A DNA stretch of 64,000 nucleotides from Octopus bimaculoides (GCF_001194135.2 NC_068995.1:36638460-36702459); one strand, 5' to 3'. Shown: positions 10,553 through 59,329, counted from the stretch's first letter. Program-made: numbers and translations. Notes: a model not told the origin generated them from the letters alone.

Positions 10553-11309
10553 CCTATATAAACACACACAGAAATATGATAAATTTTTTTTTACTTAAGT
10601 GCTCAGTCAGCTATTTCTGTATATTTATATTGAAATGTTTTATACTAAACAAAATGTTCTGTAATTGCTTTCATCTATGCCCACTACACTACTTGTATTT
10701 TCGTGTACCCTGGTCAGTTAGTGAACCCTTGACTCTGTATAAACTTCTGCTACATAATATAATTTATACCAACCCTTGTAGGTATATATACATGTATTGG
10801 TTGGTATATTTGTAGATAACACAGACATGATGCATAAATATCAAAATTAGTATCCATTTCTTTGCAGAGTGTAATTTTGATCTATAGACTTCTGGGTTAT
10901 GAGCCCAGCATGCTTCTACTGCACTATTCTGCTTGACAAATGATTAAGCAAATATATAATGTATTATTTCTTATATTGTCAGTTCTGGGTTTCATTACTT
11001 CTATTAGATCATTCATATATTCATTTCTATACATTGTACAAAATATAGTAACTACACAACACATGCTGTAGCATTAGTATGCTAATTTACTTACTGAAAG
11101 ATGACATTTCGCTCAGTCAATACTCAGAATTACATCTGACAAACCACATACATAGGTCTATACACTGAAAATTTTTCTGCGAGTTCTATAATGGTTTTCC
11201 TGCTGCATCATAGTAAACAAGCCTGCTAGTATATTTCTAATGAGTTTACCAAATAAATCATACTATAAAAAATGAATGATTTGTGTTTCTTGCCTCAAGG
11301 CCAAGACAT

Positions 11310-43250: not shown

Positions 43251-44149
43251 TAATGCCCCATTTTTAAAAATGTTTTACTGGTTTCATTTTGTAAATCATG
43301 TATCTATTACATTGTAGAAGTATTAGCGTGTGGGCTGCTGGCAAAAAAAGTTTTGAGAAACGCAGTCCTGAAGATTAGGAATAAAAATCTTAACGACACT
43401 AGACTGGAAATGACTGCGGTGACGGTGGGTAAATGAATGATTTCTTAAATAAGCATAAGGTCTCACATTTGGTGTAAAGGTGGCTAAATTTCGATATGAG
43501 TACCGTAGTTGTCAAATACCTAAGATCACCGTAAAGTTTAACAGATTATATTATCGACCACATTACTTGGCTGGTGGTATTTTATTTGATCGATCCCAGA
43601 AGAAAGTCGGTATGTCGGCAGGATCTGAACTCGAAGAGTATTGACAAAATAATGAAGTAAAAGAAAAGGTGAGGTGTCATATAAAGCACACAATCCGAAA
43701 CTTTTAAAGGATTAAAAGAAGCCTTTACAATAAATAATCAAATAATTGATAATTCTTTCTATTTTAGACACAAGGCCTGAAATGTTAAGGGGGGAGGTAG
43801 TCAATTACAATGTATAAACCTAACAATGAAAACACATATACTCAATAAAAGTATTAATTTTATCGACTCCAGAAAAGATAAAAAAAAGCAAAGTTGCCCT
43901 CAGCAGAATATAACAACAACAACAACAAGTGCAAATTTAGCTTCTCTTACTGTTTGTAACTAACATATTTATTAAAGAAAATAGTTAACAATGCTTCGTA
44001 CAAAAACATCCAGATTTTATTAATTACCACTAAACTAATAACAGAAATTGAACAAGATACCCCATAGTTAAACACAACTGAAATATGTAGAGAGAGAGAG
44101 AGAGAGATTTTATACACTTATATACAATTCTCACTCGCACAAACGAAAG

Positions 44150-52075: not shown

Positions 52076-53050
52076 CATTCTTGACACAGTCAAGGAGATT
52101 TTGTGCAACTGAAATCCAAATTTTGTATTGATTTAGCTCATCTGTATATAGGAGTTCCAGTCCTAGACTCCTCTAATATAGCTAACAGATAACAAGTCTG
52201 AGACTCCTCTAATATAGCTGGGAGGATTCATAGTTTAGAACTGAGTCCTGATGGATACCAACTAGCATGCTTTCTTTCTTAGAGAACTCTTGTTAATTCT
52301 CACTTTGCACATGATTTTCAAGGTTTTTGCAACTATTCATCTTCATCTATCCCTTGTTTTCTTAGCAAGTATCAGGTTATATCGTGGATACTAATATAAA
52401 AGTATTTTCATATGCTTCTATTTGCAAAGATGCTTAAGCCTTCGTGTAAATATTGCTGCCTGTGTAGGCAACATCCCTACTCATATTGATCATCCAGCCT
52501 CAAATTCAGCCTAACACCATCAACATCAAGTCTGGTTACTCCCATGAAAAGACTACAGTTGTTTGTGTGTGTGTGAGGACATAAGTATATATTAGGGTAA
52601 ATAGGTTTTTTTTGTATGCACAAATATACATGTGCCTATATTATTTCAGTGTTTGCACATGTTTAAGGGTAGGTCTACTAATGTATCACTTATTGACTGC
52701 ATCTATTTATGGATATTTCGAATTTACTATATTGATTATTGATCAAATTTGGTATCTGTTTTCTATATATTATTTCATTTATTCATTTGCAATGGGTGCC
52801 TTAAATACAGAAGGCTCAAAAGAAATGAAGCAAACTTGCTCCAGTAGATGAACTCCAGAGCACACATGAGCTGAGAGAGAAACTGAGTATAAGAGGGATT
52901 AAGTGAAGTGTGCAAAAGAAAAAGATGTACTAGCACGGGTATGTGATGCATATAAAGGATGACAGCTGTATAAGGCAGTATTAAGCACTCAAAGAAGTGG
53001 GAGACCAAGAAAGACTTGGGACAAAGTAATGAAAACTGATCTGAAAAAAA

Positions 53051-53137
53051 ATCTAGCACTCCCACTCAGCTCAAAACAATATCTGTGTATCATGATTATT
53101 TCCCTTCATCAGCAGGGAATAATTGTTCAGCTAGAAG
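53051..53137. repeat. Partial 350-bp target unit ending in TSD copy (53124-53137)
   Basis: Homologous to 55201-55295. Confidence 0.85.
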
Positions 53138-54931
53138 TATATTCTTTATCACAGACACAAGACCTAAACACAGAGGGGACATACGGGAACAAAAAACACA
53201 TGAACGGATGAATGTAAAATGAACTAAATTAGAATAAAAATGAGACAGCTATTTCGCTCCCGCTCCGAAATGAAACCGTGAATTCATTTTTCCTTTAAAA
53301 CTTTACATTTTAAATAATAATTTCCAACCCCGCTCTGAGGCGAAACTGCGACTTCTCTTTCCGTTTTCACCTTACAATTTTAAAGAAAACGTTTTTAAAC
53401 AAATATTCATTTATATAGTTACAGGATTTACTTATTTCCTTTTACTTTTTTTTAAACCAAAAAGTTCAACCAAATATTTTTCTCAGTCTTTCACAGCCCC
53501 TAAAATAAATCATGACTTACCACTTCATCTCCTTTTCTTCCGCGTAATTCACCACCAAGGTGTGAGGTTCAATATCCACCTCCAGCCTCAGTGGGTTCAC
53601 TCTTTCATAATGTCTTTCAATTTTGAAATTCATTCAACTTTTAGGGTGTCCTACTTCATTTAAAAATCTTGCTCCTGCTTGTATCTTGTGTGTGTGTTTT
53701 TTTTGGCTCTGTATTTCTGTAATTCTTGGCTTCCGTGTGTCTGTGTCTGTGCTTTTGTTTGACTGTAATTCTGCGTGTTTCATCTGTGTGTCTATGTCTT
53801 TAGGTTTCTGTAATTTTGAGTTATCTTGTTTCTGTTCGTCTATACTTCTGTGTTTTTGCATGTCTATGTACTTGAGTGTCTGTGGGTCAGAATGTTTCTG
53901 TACTTGTAAGTCTTTTACTGGTGATCCTACTGGTAAATCTTCCCTGTTTCTTGTCATAGGTTGGGTTTCCTCTTCTGTTGCTTTGTACTTCTTCAATTCC
54001 ACTATCGTTGGTGACTTCCTCCTCTCTCCTTTTCTTGTTTTCACCTCCTCAAAGTTCCCATCTTGTTCTGTTATCTGTTTCTGCTGTTTCTCTACCATTC
54101 TATTCTCCTGAATACTCTCCTCTACAATTTCCACTGCTTCTCTAGAGCATTTCTTTCTCAAATGCTCTCTTTCACCACATTCGTAACACTTTGGGGGTCT
54201 CCCCTTTAACATAATCTCCAGCTTTTCTCCATTTGGTAGCTCTAAAGTTTCAGGTATTTCATTATAATATTTCAGGCTCACTGCACAGATTATCTCTAAT
54301 CCATAACCCCCACCACATCACTTGTTGAGTTCGGCTTATCGTGCCCATCCTCACATCTTTGCTTTCTCTCCTCATCTCTGAATAAAGAATCGCCACTATT
54401 ATCCACTCTAGTTCTATCGACGGTGGGATTCTTCCCATCCTAATTCTGACAATTCTTCTGTCCAAACAGTTTGGCATCAAAGTCCATTTTTCTCCCTGTA
54501 TCAGCCTGTTGGAGGCCTTTTCTGATAAAAAGGTTACTATTATCGACGCATATCTCTTTCCTCTTGTAAAGAACATTATGCTGTCTGCTATATGTTCTTC
54601 CAAAATTTCTTCTATTTCTGTGCGTTCAATTCTTCTATTTTTATTCAAAAATGTTCTGAATATGACCGTCTTCTTTTCCATTTTCACTTTTTCCTCCTCT
54701 GGCAGGGTCATTTTGATATTTGACCCTTCCTTCTCTACCATACTACTATATTTCTTTATCAACTCTCCATCCCAATGTAACATCTCCTGTTTCAGCACAC
54801 ATGGGTCTCGGGGAACTCGATCTCCAGTAGCTGCCACATAACTTCTCATTTTTCTCAGTTATTCACCACCACCCAACAATGGTGGCCTTGCACAAAAAAT
54901 TTGGCTAGAGTTCTTCAAAAAACAAAAAAAC
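53138..54931 (-). mobile_element. ORF1-only Tx1/L1-like retroposon, copy 1 (full length, ~1.8 kb)
   Basis: Bounded by tgttcag(c/g)taga(a/g)g direct repeats at 53124-53137 and 54932-54945; 82-nt leader, one frameshifted ORF, T-rich 3' UTR ending ..ataaagaat. Confidence 0.8.
53517..54849 (-). pseudogene. CCHC zinc-knuckle ORF1-like protein, frameshifted
   Basis: MRSYVAATG... then LEIMLKGRPPKCYECGEREHLRKKC (54147-54188); frameshifts near 54270 and 53630; reconstructed end ERVNPLRLEVDIEPHTLVVNYAEEKEMKW*. Confidence 0.8.
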
Positions 54932-55281
54932 TGTTCAGGTAGAGGTGGTGCTGCCAAATTCCCATTTGAAATATATAATTTTCAAAGTGACAACTAGTCG
55001 CTGATCTATAAATTAGAAAATTACTATTTGTAAATCTCACAATGAGAGATATTCAGCAACAGTACTTTGGAGTAAAGATTATTTGCCAACATAACATGGC
55101 AGTCCTAGTTATGACAAATGTTGCTGTAATTTAGCCCCAGGAGACATCGTCTCCAGCTGGCTATACGACACGATCTGTCCTTATATTTTTGAACAAGGGA
55201 ATCTAGCACCCCCATTCAGCTCAAAGCAATATCTGTGCATCATGATTTCCGGGTTATTTCCCTTTATCAGTACAAAATAAT
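54932..55281. repeat. Complete 350-bp tandem target unit
   Basis: Runs from one tgttcagg/c site (54932) to the next (55282); parts recur at 53051, 58769 and inverted at 58897-59030. Confidence 0.85.
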
Positions 55282-55295
55282 TGTTCAGCTATTGG

Positions 55296-56141
55296 TTTAT
55301 TCTTTATTCTAGACACAAGGCCCAAACACAGTGGGGACAAACAACAAGTGAAAATGAATGAATGAATATAATACAATGATATGAGACGGCTATCTCCGCC
55401 CCACTCCGAGACGAAACGGTGACCTCCTTTTTCCTTTCAAACCTACATTTCAATGAAAACGTTTTTATACAATTAAATCAAACATTCTTACAGTCTTTTC
55501 TCTCCCCCCCCCCTTTTTGTATCGTTCTTTTTCTTAAACGAACTCATATCCAATTAAAGTTAATACCATATAAATCCAGTAATTTATCATAGTCTATTCC
55601 GTCCGGTACTTCGTTTGTGTCAAATATCATTTTTCTGTATTCCGCGCTTTATTTACAGTCTCTATTTTCATTCTGTGTTCTGGCACCAATGTGCCTACAA
55701 CCATTTTTTCTTTTTTCATTCCCTTCATGTCTATCACTTTTTTCATCTTTCCATTGTACTAACTTATCCACCACATCCTTTCTTACATCTTTCAATGAAG
55801 CGCAAACAAAACAAGTGGGAAGGTCGTTTTGCGGTTATTTTTATGACTGCTGTTTTTTTTCTTTTTTGTGTCGGAGAGGAATGGGTTGGTTTGTTGTCTG
55901 CAGGGGGAGGGTGGGGTTGAGAGGGTATGGGTGGGGTTCACTTAAGCTGTCCTTTTTCCTCTTCCTCTGTTTTCTTCCTGTATTTTCCCATCAATCTTCC
56001 TCATTTCTTTCTTCTATCCTTTCCGGTTCCTTCTCTGCTCTTTCCTGGTTTGGCTTATTTTTCAGAGGGCAGTCCGCTTTCATCACTGTTTCTCCAACTG
56101 TCTCCAATTGTTTTCGTTTCACCTACATTTTCACTGGTATT
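55296..56141 (-). mobile_element. Copy 2: related element with the same 3' tail and insertion site but a different body, cut by the gap
   Basis: The first ~190 bp align with the 3' ends of copies 1, 3 and 4; the remainder does not. Confidence 0.65.
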
Positions 56142-56685
56142 NNNNNNNNNNNNNNNNNNNNNNNNNNNNNNNNNNNNNNNNNNNNNNNNNNNNNNNNNNN
56201 NNNNNNNNNNNNNNNNNNNNNNNNNNNNNNNNNNNNNNNNNNNNNNNNNNNNNNNNNNNNNNNNNNNNNNNNNNNNNNNNNNNNNNNNNNNNNNNNNNNN
56301 NNNNNNNNNNNNNNNNNNNNNNNNNNNNNNNNNNNNNNNNNNNNNNNNNNNNNNNNNNNNNNNNNNNNNNNNNNNNNNNNNNNNNNNNNNNNNNNNNNNN
56401 NNNNNNNNNNNNNNNNNNNNNNNNNNNNNNNNNNNNNNNNNNNNNNNNNNNNNNNNNNNNNNNNNNNNNNNNNNNNNNNNNNNNNNNNNNNNNNNNNNNN
56501 NNNNNNNNNNNNNNNNNNNNNNNNNNNNNNNNNNNNNNNNNNNNNNNNNNNNNNNNNNNNNNNNNNNNNNNNNNNNNNNNNNNNNNNNNNNNNNNNNNNN
56601 NNNNNNNNNNNNNNNNNNNNNNNNNNNNNNNNNNNNNNNNNNNNNNNNNNNNNNNNNNNNNNNNNNNNNNNNNNNNNNNNNNNNA

Positions 56686-58302
56686 AAGACATGCAGGAAC
56701 AAAAAACACATGAAGGAATGAATGTAAATGAATTAAATTTCAAAGAAAATGAGATGGTCATCTTGATCCTACTCCGAGATGAAACCATGAACTCCCTTTT
56801 TTTTTTTTCCTTTTTAAACCAACATTTTAGCTAACAATTTCCCACCCAGATCAGAGGGGAAACCGCGACTTACATCTTCCCTTTCACCTTACATTATAAA
56901 AAACCTTTTGAAAACCAGTTTACTCAACAGTTGCAAGATTTACTTGTTTTTCCATAAAAAGTTCAAATAAATGTTTTTCTCAGTTACAGTTTTTACAAAA
57001 ATATAACGACTTACCACTTCTCCTTTTCCATAATTCACCACCGAGGTGCGAGGTTCAGCATCTACCTCGGGCCTCAGTGGGTTCAGTCTCTCACAATGTG
57101 TTCATTTGACTGTAATTCTACGTGTTTCGTCTGTGTGTCTAAGTAATTCTAAGTTTCCGTAATTCTGGGTTGTCTTGTTTCTGTTCATTATTACTTTGTG
57201 TGCTTTTGCATGTCAATGTGTTTGAATGTGTGCTGGTCTGAATGACTCCGTACTTGTAAGTCCTTTACTGGTGATCCTACTGGTAAATCTTCTCCGATTC
57301 TCGTCATGGGTTGGGTTTCCTCTTCTATTGCTTTGCACTTCTTCAATTCCACTGTTGTCAGTGACTTCCTTCTTTCTCTTTTTCTGGGTTTCACCTCCGC
57401 AAAATTCCCATCATGTTCTGTTTTCCGTTTCTGTTTTTTTTCTACCATTATATCTCCCTGAACACTCTCCTCTACCATTTCCACTGCTGCTCTAGGGCAT
57501 TTCTTTCTCAAGTGCCCTCTTTCACCACATCTATAACACTTTGGGGGTCTCCCCTCCAACATTATTTCCAGCTTTTCTCCATTTGGTAGTTCCAAAGTTT
57601 CCGCCATTTCGTCATAATATTTCGGGCTCACTGCACATATTATCTCTACTCTGTAGCCCCAGCATTTCACTTGTTGTGTTCGGCTTATCATTCCAATCCT
57701 CAGGTCTTTGCTTTTCTTCCTCAGCTCTGAATTAAAAATTGCGGCTATTATCCATTCTGGGTCTACTGGCAGTGGGATTCTTCCCGCCCTAACCCTCACG
57801 ATTCTTTGCCCAAACAGTTTGGCATCAACGTCCATTTTTCTCCCTGTATCAGCCTGTTGTCGGTATTTTTTCACCTCCTCTGATACAAAGGTTACTACTA
57901 TTGACGCATATTTCCTTCCTCTTGTAAAGAACGTTATCCTTTCTCCTATTTGTTCCTCCAAGATTTCTTCTATCTCTTTCTGCGGTGCGTGTTCAATTCT
58001 CCTATTCATATTCGAAAATGTTCTGAATATGACCGTCTTGTTTTCCATTTTCCTTTTTTCCTCCTCTGGCAGGGTCATTTTTATATTTGACCCTTCTTTC
58101 TTTATCATACTATAATATTTGGTTATCAACCCCTCATTCCACTGTATCATCTCCAGCTTCAGCACACGTCAGTCTAGGGGAACTTGACCTCTAGTAGCCT
58201 CCACATAACTTTTCATTTTTCAATTCTTCACCACCACCCAATGATGGTGGCCTCCCTCGCACAAAAAAATTCCACTTAGAATTCTTCAAAAAACAACAAA
58301 AA
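56686..58302 (-). mobile_element. ORF1-only Tx1/L1-like retroposon, copy 3 (3' end in gap)
   Basis: Colinear with copy 1; its 5' end abuts TSD tgttcaggtagagg (58303-58316). Confidence 0.85.
57191..58216 (-). pseudogene. CCHC zinc-knuckle ORF1-like protein (324-aa open stretch; in-frame stop ~15 codons after the ATG at 58216)
   Basis: MKSYVEATRG...; LEIMLEGRPPKCYRCGERGHLRKKCP (CX2CX4HX4C at 57497-57538). Confidence 0.85.
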
Positions 58303-58316
58303 TGTTCAGGTAGAGG

Positions 58317-58754
58317 TTAACTCTTTATTACTGGCACAAGGCCTAAACACAGAGGGGACATATACAGACATGTGGGAACAAAAAACACATGAAAGGATGA
58401 ATGTGAAATGAATAAAATTACAATGCAAATGAGATAGCCATCTCGCTCCCACTGCAAGATGAAACTGTCCATTCCCTTTCCTTTAAACCTATAGGAAAGG
58501 GTTTCTTTTTCCTTTTTTAAACCAAAAAGTTCAACCAAATGTTTTTCAGTTTTCACAGTTTCTAATTAAATTACGACTTACTACTTCATCTTCTCCTTTT
58601 CGTCCATATAATTCACCACCGAGGTGCAAGGTTCAACATCTACCTCTGGCCTCAGTGGGTTCAGTCTCTCACAATGTCTTTCAATTTTGCAATTCTTTCA
58701 ACTTTTAGGGTGTCCTACTTCATTTAAAAATCTCACTCCTATTTGAATCTTGCG
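58317..58754 (-). mobile_element. Copy 4: 5'-truncated insertion in tandem with copy 3
   Basis: 3' ~440 bp of the element, flanked by tgttcaggtagagg (58303-58316) and tgttagggtagagg (58755-58768). Confidence 0.8.
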
Positions 58755-58867
58755 TGTTAGGGTAGAGGTGGCACTGCCAAATTCCCATTCGCAATATATA
58801 GTTTTCAAAGTGACAACTAGTCACTGATCTATAAATTAGAAAATTACTATTTGTAAATCTCTGTATG

Positions 58868-58923
58868 TTGCTGTAATTTAGCCCCAGGAGACATAGATGT
58901 CTCCTGGGGCTAAATTACAGCAA
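58868..58923. repeat. Perfect 27-bp-arm hairpin at the inversion point of the target array
   Basis: ttgctgtaatttagccccaggagacat-ag-atgtctcctggggctaaattacagcaa. Confidence 0.95.
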
Positions 58924-59329
58924 AATTCGTCCTAAACCAGGACTGTCATGTTATGTTGGCAAATATTTTTTACTCCAAAGTACTGTTGCTGAATATCTCT
59001 CGTTGTGAGATTTACAAATAGTAACTTTCTGTGCTGACCACATCATCTTTGTTATTCCTCTTCGTCACCCTAACTCATTCACGCTTCATAATTCTATGTA
59101 TAAAAGATTGCATTGGACTAGCCTTATCTGCCTATCAAATTAACTATAGCTTCGTCCTTCTGTACAACTAGCCATCACTCTTTCCCCTCTAGGCCACGGG
59201 TTACCTACCATACGTCACCTACCCTTACGTTTATCTTATTCCTTCTAGGCTACCTGTCACCACCGATACTTTTATCAACCGCTCCCCTCTCTCGCTTACA
59301 GTTCCAAGAACTATGTGTCTAACCCTAAC

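What the first reader, a model, noticed from the sequence alone, without database searches (positions are those of the whole stretch)
53051..59030. Sequence-specific retroposon system: four insertions at one 14-bp site in a 350-bp tandem repeat
Seen: the motif TGTTCAGGTAGAGG, or a decayed form, lies at every element junction (53124, 54932, 55282, 58303, 58755). Removing the elements restores a head-to-tail 350-bp unit. Copy 1 has the motif on both sides, like a TSD. Copy 4 is 5'-truncated, joins the motif through a tgtt microhomology and is stacked on copy 3 with one motif between them. Established: TSDs, 5' truncation and tandem stacking at one site are hallmarks of target-primed reverse transcription by site-specific non-LTR elements; Xenopus Tx1L/Tx2L insert specifically into another repeat (Tx1D/Tx2D). 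Inference: this is a target-specific Tx1-like family parasitising a host tandem repeat. I do not recognise it as described.
Basis: partly seen in the sequence, partly recalled or inferred. Interest (0 to 1): 0.85.

Follow-up and report, generated by a model that had tools for sequence, protein, structure and literature searches.

The report
Site-specific ORF1-only LINE in octopus repeat
An octopus genome segment carries four old copies of a small LINE-derived retroposon that has lost its reverse transcriptase gene, and these copies, like every related copy I could fetch, sit at the same position of one host repeat; this is a new example of a known kind of target-specific mobile element.

Summary
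The motif TGTTCAGGTAGAGG, or a form with 2-3 mismatches, lies at all five stated junctions. Between the motifs lie four copies (E1-E4) of a ~1.8-kb element, all in one orientation, inside a 364-bp host unit (U).

The element carries one minus-strand ORF with an RRM-like domain and one CCHC knuckle. It has no RT or endonuclease gene.

The same ORF family is ORF1 of full-length L1/Tx1-type LINEs in Argonauta hians, Octopus vulgaris and O. sinensis. Those LINEs carry an APE endonuclease, RT and zf-RVT, and share the element's 3' tail. The element is therefore an ORF1-only, "half-LINE" derivative.

Five further, non-orthologous O. vulgaris loci hold it at the homologous U position and in the same orientation. 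Three of them show a readable duplication: 13/14, 18/19, and about 17 of 19 with one indel. The duplicated sequence differs between host-repeat subfamilies. Two empty sites with a single motif were found.

ORF divergence between copies shows dN/dS of 0.2-0.55, including E1 versus E3 in the window. This argues against a local duplication of a dead block.

Refinements: all window copies are dead. The host is a short-array, foldback-like repeat, not a long satellite. The gap hides at least one junction. Tx1-clade membership is unproven. I rate it a new member of a known kind, of moderate interest.

The parts
53051..53123 (+). Tail of host unit U (unit positions ~269-350), left flank of E1
   Evidence: Aligns to U_full 269-360 at 81.5% by BLAST (86% over 87 MAFFT-aligned sites that include the motif copy at 53124-53137).
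53124..53137 (+). Target-site duplication, left copy of E1 (TGTTCAGCTAGAAG)
   Evidence: 12 of 14 identical to the right copy at 54932.
53138..54931 (-). E1: full-length 1794-bp ORF1-only element. In ORF sense it has a templated T-rich 5' start, an ORF at 53517-54849 broken by a frameshift near 54270 and a stop near 53634, and a 3' UTR ending ...GATAAAGAATATA.
   Evidence: CCHC knuckle PF00098. No terminal inverted or long direct repeats.
54932..55295 (+). The one complete host unit U (364 bp). Its first 14 nt are the right duplication copy of E1 and its last 14 nt (55282-55295, TGTTCAGCTATTGG) are the left copy of E2.
   Evidence: Homologous to the flanks of E in O. vulgaris loci (nhmmer 1e-43 for L001, 1e-11 for L002). 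No Rfam family.
55296..56141 (-). E2: 3' part of a divergent member of the same element family, cut by the assembly gap
   Evidence: The 3' UTR is homologous to E1. A degenerate ORF with '..MKADCP' at the gap edge aligns weakly to the end of the CCHC knuckle.
56142..56684 (.). Assembly gap. It hides the 5' part of E2, at least one junction (with or without a U unit), and the last ~40 nt of E3.
   Evidence: The flanks are non-contiguous positions of two different copies.
56685..58302 (-). E3: near-full-length copy. Its longest ORF is 57191-58165 (324 aa), preceded by a stop at codon 16 of the ancestral ORF and followed by stops.
   Evidence: The ORF hits Octopus proteins.
58303..58316 (+). Single motif copy between stacked E3 (its 5' end) and E4 (its 3' end)
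   Evidence: Exact TGTTCAGGTAGAGG.
58317..58754 (-). E4: 5'-truncated copy holding only the 3'-terminal part of the element, joined to the motif at a tgtt microhomology
   Evidence: Aligns to E1 positions 6-168 and 298-556; junction read.
58755..58895 (+). Motif (TGTTAGGGTAGAGG, 12 of 14 to 58303) followed by the head of host unit U (unit 1-107 and 187-225)
58896..59030 (-). Inverted arm of the host repeat (unit 223 down to 84). Together with 58838-58895 it forms a palindrome and marks the end of the host repeat.
   Evidence: (hairpin gives spurious miRNA hits). The same architecture is seen in L001, L002, L005 and L006.

Best explanation
E is a non-autonomous, ORF1-only ('half-LINE') member of an octopod L1/Tx1-type non-LTR retrotransposon lineage.

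**Proposed mechanism.** The element is transcribed from its own 5' end. Its RNA carries a conserved 3' tail, with a small stem-loop just upstream of AAUAAA, that it shares with full-length relatives. It is reverse-transcribed by target-primed reverse transcription (TPRT), using endonuclease and RT supplied in trans by an autonomous relative.

**Target and cut.** Integration is position- and orientation-specific, at one site of a host repeat (unit U, 364 bp, arranged in short arrays inside a foldback-like repeat). In the window's subfamily the first nick falls on the + strand after ...GTAGAGG. The second falls 14 nt upstream on the other strand. This gives a 14-bp duplication here and 18-19 bp in other host subfamilies. 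Each insertion regenerates the site, so later insertions stack head to tail (E3/E4).

**History of the window.** It records at least four separate, ancient insertions into one host array. All are now inactive.

**Shown:** insertion with duplication (filled versus empty sites); same site and orientation in all copies; one 5' truncation; ORF1 homology to bona fide LINEs; shared 3' tail; purifying selection on ORF1 between copies.

**Inferred:** TPRT itself; trans-mobilisation; the partner's endonuclease as the source of specificity.
For: 1. **Junction anatomy in the window**.

2. **Five non-orthologous O. vulgaris loci hold E at the homologous U position and in the same orientation.**
   - L001: CGTTCGGCTAGAGG / TGTTCGGCTAGAGG, 13 of 14.
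   - L006: CTGGAGTAGCCTGGCTTGC / CTGGAGTAGCATGGCTTGC, 18 of 19.
   - L005: GAGTAGCCGAACCCAGCA / GAGCTAGACGAACCCAGCA.
   - L002 and L003: the 5' junction abuts the U head.
   - The two flanks agree within a locus but differ between host subfamilies. This implies separate insertion events after the hosts diverged.

3. **Empty sites with one motif and contiguous flanks** were found at L002 9586-9604 and at about L006 12340-12357.

4. **dN/dS between E ORFs is 0.20-0.55**, including E1 versus E3 (0.28 and 0.55). K2P between E copies is 0.20-0.32, against 0.07-0.16 between U units in the window.

5. **The ORF family is ORF1 of full-length LINEs.**
   - L004 (Argonauta) is 5.44 kb with ORF1 plus ORF2 (Exo_endo_phos, RVT_1, zf-RVT) and a perfect 15-bp duplication.
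   - Its ORF2 aligns over 8-812 with human L1 ORF2p at 4e-42.
   - L007 and L008 are further full-length relatives.

6. **The 3' tail is conserved** between E and these LINEs. A 3-bp stem with a CUUGU loop is paired in 27 of 27 cells, and 2 of 3 pairs show compensatory changes.

7. **The T-rich 5' start keeps the same interrupted pattern** in different copies (TTTTTGTTGYTTTTKGAAGAA). It is therefore templated, not a poly(A) tail of the other strand.

8. **E has no terminal inverted or long direct repeats**.

9. **Precedent:** Tx1-clade LINEs and their non-autonomous partners target other transposons, satellites and microsatellites (PMC4494074). ORF1-only L1 derivatives (HAL1) exist (PMC5753468).
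Against: - No RT or endonuclease is encoded in E or anywhere in the window, and no autonomous element was seen at a U site. The partner is therefore hypothetical.
- E's ORF1 is only 24-32% identical to the ORF1 of the full-length LINEs sampled.
- Only one 5'-truncated copy was seen.
- Every E copy sits in a host repeat of much the same architecture, and E and U diverge in parallel between loci. Part of the spread could therefore be co-transport with the host repeat, or gene conversion between host repeats.
- The loci were reached through annotated proteins (6 loci), not a genome-wide census.
- The structure prediction for ORF1 failed (pLDDT 33), so the RRM assignment rests on a sequence motif only.
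Confidence: 0.8

Rival explanations
1. Composite-element or gene-conversion spread. E entered the host repeat only once or a few times. The host repeat, a foldback-like mobile unit flanked by (TA)n, then carried E to new places, or E was copied from filled to empty host repeats by recombination. On this view E itself is not, or is hardly, target-specific.
For: - All E copies lie in host repeats with the same layout: U from about position 141 to 360, then E, then U 1 to 225-290, then an inverted arm.
- The host repeat has recurrent termini and (TA)n flanks. It also occurs alone as hairpin units (L002 6880-7150; L006 12190-12420).
- E and U diverge in parallel (E 62-82% identical; U and U2 are only detectable by nhmmer).
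Against: - Duplications match within a locus yet differ strongly between host subfamilies (14 versus 18-19 bp, with different sequences). This needs at least three separate integrations at the homologous position.
- The window's single array holds a divergent E2, a 5'-truncated E4 with a microhomology junction, and an E3/E4 stack with no U between them.
- dN/dS below 1 between E1 and E3.
- Empty sites exist next to filled ones.
Confidence: 0.12
2. Local segmental tandem duplication or misassembly. A single ~2.15-kb block (E plus U) was duplicated in place, or repeats were mis-joined around the gap.
For: - E1 plus U is 2158 bp, and the next unit starts with the same junction.
- A gap lies in the middle.
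- Left motif copies carry C at motif position 8, while right copies carry G.
Against: - E-E divergence (K2P 0.20-0.32) is two to three times U-U divergence (0.07-0.16).
- dN/dS is 0.28-0.55 between E1 and E3 instead of about 1.
- E2 is not a copy of E1 beyond the 3' UTR.
- E3/E4 lack an intervening U.
- Junctions lie inside contiguous sequence, not at the gap.
- The same insertion site recurs on other O. vulgaris chromosomes.
Confidence: 0.04
3. A different class of element. Options are a Gag-only LTR or TR-GAG element with U as the LTR, a Penelope-like element or retrozyme with pseudo-LTRs and hammerhead ribozymes, a DIRS-like element, or a + strand poly(A) retroposon with an antisense ORF.
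For: - A CCHC protein flanked by direct U sequences with ~85 bp terminal redundancy in L001.
- Inverted U arms.
- CTGATGA in two of three U tails.
- An A-run at the + strand right end of E (15 A in L001).
Against: - No hammerhead or other Rfam hit at E up to 10.
- No TG..CA boundaries, PBS or PPT.
- The duplication flanks E, not U.
- The ORF is homologous to ORF1 located directly upstream of an APE/RT ORF2.
- The A/T-run is templated and interrupted in the same way in different copies.
- E4 keeps the end that is 3' in ORF sense.
Confidence: 0.03

Closest known systems
Tx1L in Tx1D (Xenopus laevis), and Tx1-clade target-specific LINEs in general (Keno, Kibi, Koshi, Tx1-Mar)
   Same: An APE-type LINE lineage whose members integrate at one defined site inside another repeated or mobile element, or in microsatellites. 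This produces composite elements, and host-repeat and LINE subfamilies diverge in parallel (PMC4494074, PMC1950540). Relatives of E have the L1/Tx1-type ORF2 (APE, RT, zf-RVT), and one sits in (ATT)n.
   Different: E has no ORF2. The host is a foldback-like repeat with 364-bp units rather than a piggyBac or mariner non-autonomous transposon. E has no poly(A) tail. Clade membership by RT phylogeny was not tested.
SINEU / Tx1-Mar pair in crocodilians
   Same: A non-autonomous partner shows the same target preference as its LINE and is found almost only inside one transposon family (PMC4494074).
   Different: SINEU has an snRNA-derived head and no ORF. E keeps a full ORF1 that evolved under purifying selection.
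HAL1 (half-L1) of mammals
   Same: A LINE derivative that keeps the 5' end, ORF1 and 3' end but has lost ORF2, and that amplified as such (PMC5753468).
   Different: HAL1 is of independent origin, inserts without site specificity, and is poly(A)-tailed. E is site-specific and has a defined non-poly(A) 3' end.
R1 and R2 in 28S rDNA
   Same: One fixed site in a tandemly repeated target, fixed orientation, a defined duplication (14 bp for R1, from my own knowledge), and 5'-truncated copies.
   Different: Different clades (R2 uses a restriction-like endonuclease). Their target is a host gene, not a selfish repeat.

Membership tests
Non-LTR (LINE-type) retroposon integrated by TPRT | Target-site duplication flanking each copy, with the empty site holding one copy | tested here: met
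   E1 12/14, E4 12/14, L001 13/14, L006 18/19, L005 about 17 of 19 with one indel. Empty sites at L002 9586-9604 and about L006 12340-12357.
Non-LTR (LINE-type) retroposon integrated by TPRT | 5' truncation with a constant 3' end | tested here: met
   E4 keeps only the 3'-terminal ~440 nt. This is a single case. All six readable 3' junctions (E1, E2, E4, L001, L005, L006) end within a few nt after AATAAAGA.
Non-LTR (LINE-type) retroposon integrated by TPRT | No LTRs or terminal inverted repeats | tested here: met
   The repeat finder on E1 with its flanks found only short internal chance repeats.
Non-LTR (LINE-type) retroposon integrated by TPRT | Encodes RT (and endonuclease) | tested here: not met
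   No ORF2 homology in E or in the window (tblastn). ORF2 is present only in related full-length elements. E is therefore non-autonomous.
Non-LTR (LINE-type) retroposon integrated by TPRT | ORF1 and 3' tail homologous to those of a bona fide LINE | tested here: met
   Argonauta ORF1 against E copies by tblastn: 7e-14 to 3e-19; profile hits. 3' tail alignment and covarying stem.
Tx1 clade of the L1 superfamily | RT domain groups with Tx1 in a phylogeny (RTclass1-type test) | not testable with these tools
   E has no RT and no reference RT set was available. A relative's ORF2 is closest to L1 ORF2p among solved structures. 'L1-Tx1' LINEs are annotated in octopus (PMC13282606, PMC8967140).
Tx1 clade of the L1 superfamily | ORF2 with an N-terminal APE endonuclease, RT and a C-terminal zinc-binding motif; ORF1 with a CCHC knuckle | tested here: inconclusive
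   Met for the full-length relatives (PF03372, PF00078, PF13966). For E itself only ORF1 with CCHC is present.
Tx1 clade of the L1 superfamily | Sequence-specific insertion into a repeated target | tested here: met
   9 of 9 E insertions lie at the homologous U position and in the same orientation.
HAL1-like ORF1-only derivative | Keeps the LINE ends and ORF1, lacks ORF2, and propagates in that form | tested here: met
   The element is about 1.7-1.8 kb where both ends are readable (E1 1794, L001 1744, L005 1728, L006 1725 bp). L002, about 1.8 kb, lacks its first ~48 nt. dN/dS is 0.2-0.55.
Large-unit satellite or segmental tandem duplication | All parts of the repeat unit equally and neutrally diverged between copies | tested here: not met
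   E K2P is 0.20-0.32 against U 0.07-0.16. dN/dS is below 1. E2 is divergent. E3/E4 have no U between them.
Penelope-like element or retrozyme | Hammerhead ribozyme in the terminal or tandem repeat | tested here: not met
   No hammerhead family hit at E up to 10 over 52900-59200. The GAAA core is not conserved between U copies.
LTR retrotransposon (Gag-only, TR-GAG type) | LTRs with TG..CA ends, PBS and PPT, and a duplication outside the LTRs | tested here: not met
   Reading of the junctions: no PBS or PPT. The duplication flanks E, not U. U flanks are incomplete and end in an inverted arm.

The most novel reading that the evidence does not exclude
Target choice may be specified by the ORF1-only element itself rather than only by a partner's endonuclease. 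It could act through its RNA, for instance via read-through transcripts carrying host-repeat sequence that anneal to the nicked target, or through its ORF1 protein. Three E sublineages sit at the same position of three host-repeat subfamilies whose target sequences have diverged: TGTTCAGGTAGAGG, CTGGAGTAGCATGGCTTGC and GAGTAGCCGAACCCAGCA. If one autonomous LINE mobilises all three, targeting would be guided by homology or by the passenger. That would be a naturally re-programmable form of site-specific retrotransposition.
Probability: 0.1. Interest if true: 0.8.

Novelty: new member of a known kind. Interest (0 to 1): 0.42.

Why it matters
- It adds a cephalopod case to the short list of LINE systems that live inside another selfish repeat, as Tx1L lives in Tx1D. 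Here the copy that spread is an ORF1-only derivative whose ORF1 stayed under selection.
- That makes a clean natural system for two questions: what ORF1p contributes in cis, and how target specificity is kept while the host repeat and element diverge together.
- The lineage also contains full-length, possibly young copies with different targets: (ATT)n, and a 99.6%-identical head-to-tail stack. These copies could supply endonucleases with distinct specificities for comparison.
- For octopus genome annotation, several gene models turn out to be fragments of this ORF1.

Tried and rejected
**Rejected ideas**
- Hammerhead, Penelope or retrozyme: prompted by CTGATGA in U and GAAAC hairpins in the 3' UTR. 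No Rfam hit, and the core is not conserved.
- U as an LTR, or a DIRS-type split repeat: no PBS, PPT or TG..CA, and the duplication flanks E.
- + strand orientation with a poly(A) tail: the A/T-run is templated.
- U as a small RNA gene target (snRNA, 5S, tRNA): no Rfam hit.

**Dead ends**
- The AlphaFold model of ORF1 from a 5-sequence alignment was unusable (pLDDT 33), so no fold search was run.
- The word-indexed protein searches returned only 3-5 hits each. The full HMMER scan was needed to see the family (378 hits).
- O. bimaculoides proteins P0002, P0003 and P0005 have no contig on record.
- Loci fetched in parallel calls (L003, L005, L006) were not available to Python and were read by eye.
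- Christensen et al. 2000 on the Tx1L endonuclease is not held.
- The tail-motif match at window 43757-43777 is a different short element, not an E copy.

Full report
**What is in the window.**
- The region is AT-rich animal DNA (36% GC). Its ORFs match only octopod proteins, so the window is an octopus genome.
- The motif TGTTCAGGTAGAGG is exact at 54932 and 58303, and present with 2-3 mismatches at 53124, 55282 and 58755.
- BLAST of the pieces against the window gives this layout:
  - U tail 53051-53123
  - motif
  - E1 53138-54931
  - motif plus complete unit U 54932-55295 (364 bp, ending in another motif copy)
  - E2 55296-56141
  - gap
  - E3 56685-58302
  - motif
  - E4 58317-58754
  - motif plus U head 58755-58895
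  - inverted copy of U positions 223 to 84, ending at 59030
- No other E or U copy occurs in the 64 kb, even by nhmmer.
- E1 and E3 are 82.7% identical. E4 equals the left ~556 nt of E1 with an internal deletion.
- E2 shares only the left UTR with E1; the rest is a divergent relative.

**The gap.**
- Its left edge lies inside E2's degenerate ORF. Its right edge is position ~41 of E3.
- The two sides are therefore not continuous, and no real reading frame crosses the gap.
- At least one junction is hidden. The 543-bp estimate is probably too small, unless E2 is 5'-truncated.

**What E is.**
- E carries one ORF on the minus strand, ancestrally ~430 aa (53517-54849 in E1).
- The ORF has an RNP1-like 'RG..YGT..V.F..EE.A' stretch, one CCHC knuckle (PF00098), a basic low-complexity region and a conserved C-terminal motif.
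- It has no RT, no endonuclease, and no terminal inverted or long direct repeats.
- All window copies are broken:
  - E1 has a frameshift and a stop.
  - E3 has a stop at codon 16 and later stops.
  - E4 is truncated.
  - E2 is degenerate.
- In ORF sense every full-length copy starts with the same interrupted T-run (TTTTTGTTGYTTTTKGAAGAA) and ends ...AATAAAGA plus 4-5 nt, with no poly(A). The A-run on the + strand is therefore a templated 5' end, not a tail.

**The family.**
- A full HMMER scan found 378 relatives. Those with names are all from octopods: O. bimaculoides, O. vulgaris, O. sinensis and Argonauta hians.
- In Argonauta (L004) the same ORF is ORF1 of a 5.44-kb LINE.
  - Its ORF2 has Exo_endo_phos, RVT_1 and zf-RVT.
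  - That ORF2 aligns end to end with human L1 ORF2p at 4e-42, with R2 far behind.
  - This copy has a perfect 15-bp duplication.
- O. vulgaris L007 holds at least three head-to-tail full-length copies. They are 99.6% identical, with only ~9 nt between them.
- O. sinensis L008 is a full-length copy sitting inside (ATT)n.
- E and these LINEs share the 3' tail ..TGTCCCCTCTGTGT..GGCC-TTGTG-CC..AATAAA. It includes a 3-bp stem with a CUUGU loop that is paired in all nine sequences, with compensatory changes in two of three pairs.
- E is thus an ORF2-less derivative of an L1/Tx1-type lineage, comparable in architecture to mammalian HAL1 (PMC5753468).
- 'L1-Tx1' LINEs are listed in octopus repeat annotations, but without target analysis (PMC13282606, PMC8967140).

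**Is it site-specific?** Five further O. vulgaris loci, on four different chromosome records and with unrelated flanks, carry E. All nine insertions examined lie at the homologous position of a U-type repeat and in the same orientation.

| Locus | Left copy / right copy | Match |
|---|---|---|
| L001 | CGTTCGGCTAGAGG / TGTTCGGCTAGAGG | 13 of 14 |
| L006 | CTGGAGTAGCCTGGCTTGC / CTGGAGTAGCATGGCTTGC | 18 of 19 |
| L005 | GAGTAGCCGAACCCAGCA / GAGCTAGACGAACCCAGCA | about 17 of 19, one indel |

- L002 and L003 show the 5' junction on the U head; their other side is deleted or interrupted.
- The U flanks in L002 are homologous to the window's U only at nhmmer level (1e-11). I call this subfamily U2. 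The flanks in L006 match it closely (nhmmer 5e-45), and a third subfamily (U3) flanks E in L005.
- The duplicated sequence has diverged between subfamilies, while the two copies at each locus agree. Integration therefore happened separately in already diverged hosts.
- Two empty sites were found, one in the inverted arm of L002 and one in an isolated fragment in L006. Each shows left flank, a single motif and right flank in direct continuity.

**Against a local duplication.**
- Within the window, E copies differ by K2P 0.20-0.32, while U pieces differ by 0.07-0.16.
- dN/dS between E1 and E3 is 0.28-0.55, and 0.20-0.40 for other pairs.
- Much of the E-E divergence therefore arose while ORF1 was under selection, before insertion.
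- Together with the divergent E2 and the E3/E4 stack with no U between them, this rules out a simple duplicated 2.15-kb block.

**The host repeat.**
- It is not a long satellite.
- In L001, L002 and L006 it starts near U position 141-148, runs through the target site to U 225-290, then folds back into an inverted arm.
- In L005 only about 60 nt of the U tail lie to the left of E.
- Hairpin units alone, flanked by (TA)n, also occur.
- The window's array is longer, with at least three target sites.
- This repeated architecture, and the parallel divergence of E and U, leave room for some co-transport or gene conversion. I rate that as the main rival (0.12).

**Mechanism and verdict.**
- The best reading (0.8) is repeated TPRT integration of a non-autonomous, ORF1-only L1/Tx1-type element at one site of a host repeat.
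- The partner LINE is inferred, not seen.
- The closest known systems are Tx1L/Tx1D and the crocodilian Tx1-Mar/SINEU pair (PMC4494074, PMC1950540).
- Membership of the Tx1 clade could not be tested without an RT.
- This is a new member of a known kind. It is interesting to transposon specialists but not surprising.

Noticed in passing
window 52790-53047: The C-terminal coding tail of another LINE (translation ..GRPRKTWDKVMKTDLKK, looks RTE-like from my own knowledge), followed by A7. It abuts the host unit at U position ~269, so the left end of the host array is probably cut by this insertion.
   Followed up: no
L007 4446-19185 (O. vulgaris OX597840.1, about 31.87 Mb): At least three head-to-tail full-length L1/Tx1-type LINE copies. 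The period is 5.27 kb, they are 99.6% identical, the first copy's ORF2 is intact, and only ~9 nt (CACTGATAA / CACCCGATA) lie between copies. The junction and the A-rich 3' end differ between copies while the bodies are nearly identical. The array runs into an assembly gap.
   Followed up: partly
L008 9778-15347 (O. sinensis CM016872.1): A full-length relative of the same LINE lineage is inserted in an (ATT)n microsatellite, with the repeat on both sides. This suggests a microsatellite-specific family.
   Followed up: partly
L002 6880-7150; L006 12190-12420; window 58838-59030: The host repeat also occurs as stand-alone hairpin units (U positions ~88 to 232 plus an inverted arm back to ~140), flanked by (TA)n on both sides. 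The host repeat therefore looks like a foldback-type mobile element with a (TA)n preference of its own. Its class is unknown.
   Followed up: partly
window 43745-43800 (minus strand); L001 8720-8790: Short elements outside U carry a 3' tail resembling the LINE/E tail (..CAGGCCTTGTGTCTAAAATAGAAAG; ..GTCCCCTCTATATATAGCCCTTTGTGGGCAATAAAGA). They are probably SINE-like passengers of the same LINE lineage.
   Followed up: partly
L003 10001-60742 (P0006); P0070, P0093: Public gene models fuse fragments of this ORF1 to unrelated domains: Integrase_H2C2, LDL-receptor class A, WD40. These are probably annotation chimeras caused by the element.
   Followed up: no
window 53255-53390: The 3' UTR of E1 contains two ~70-nt direct repeats. 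Each holds a conserved block (..CCGAGATGAAACCGTGA.. / ..GAGGCGAAAC..) that is also present in E2-E4 and in the O. vulgaris copies. Copy number varies (E4 has one). Function unknown.
   Followed up: no
window 10862-10933 (minus strand): A weak tRNA match (33 bits, Rfam gathering score 29), possibly a tRNA-derived SINE head.
   Followed up: no
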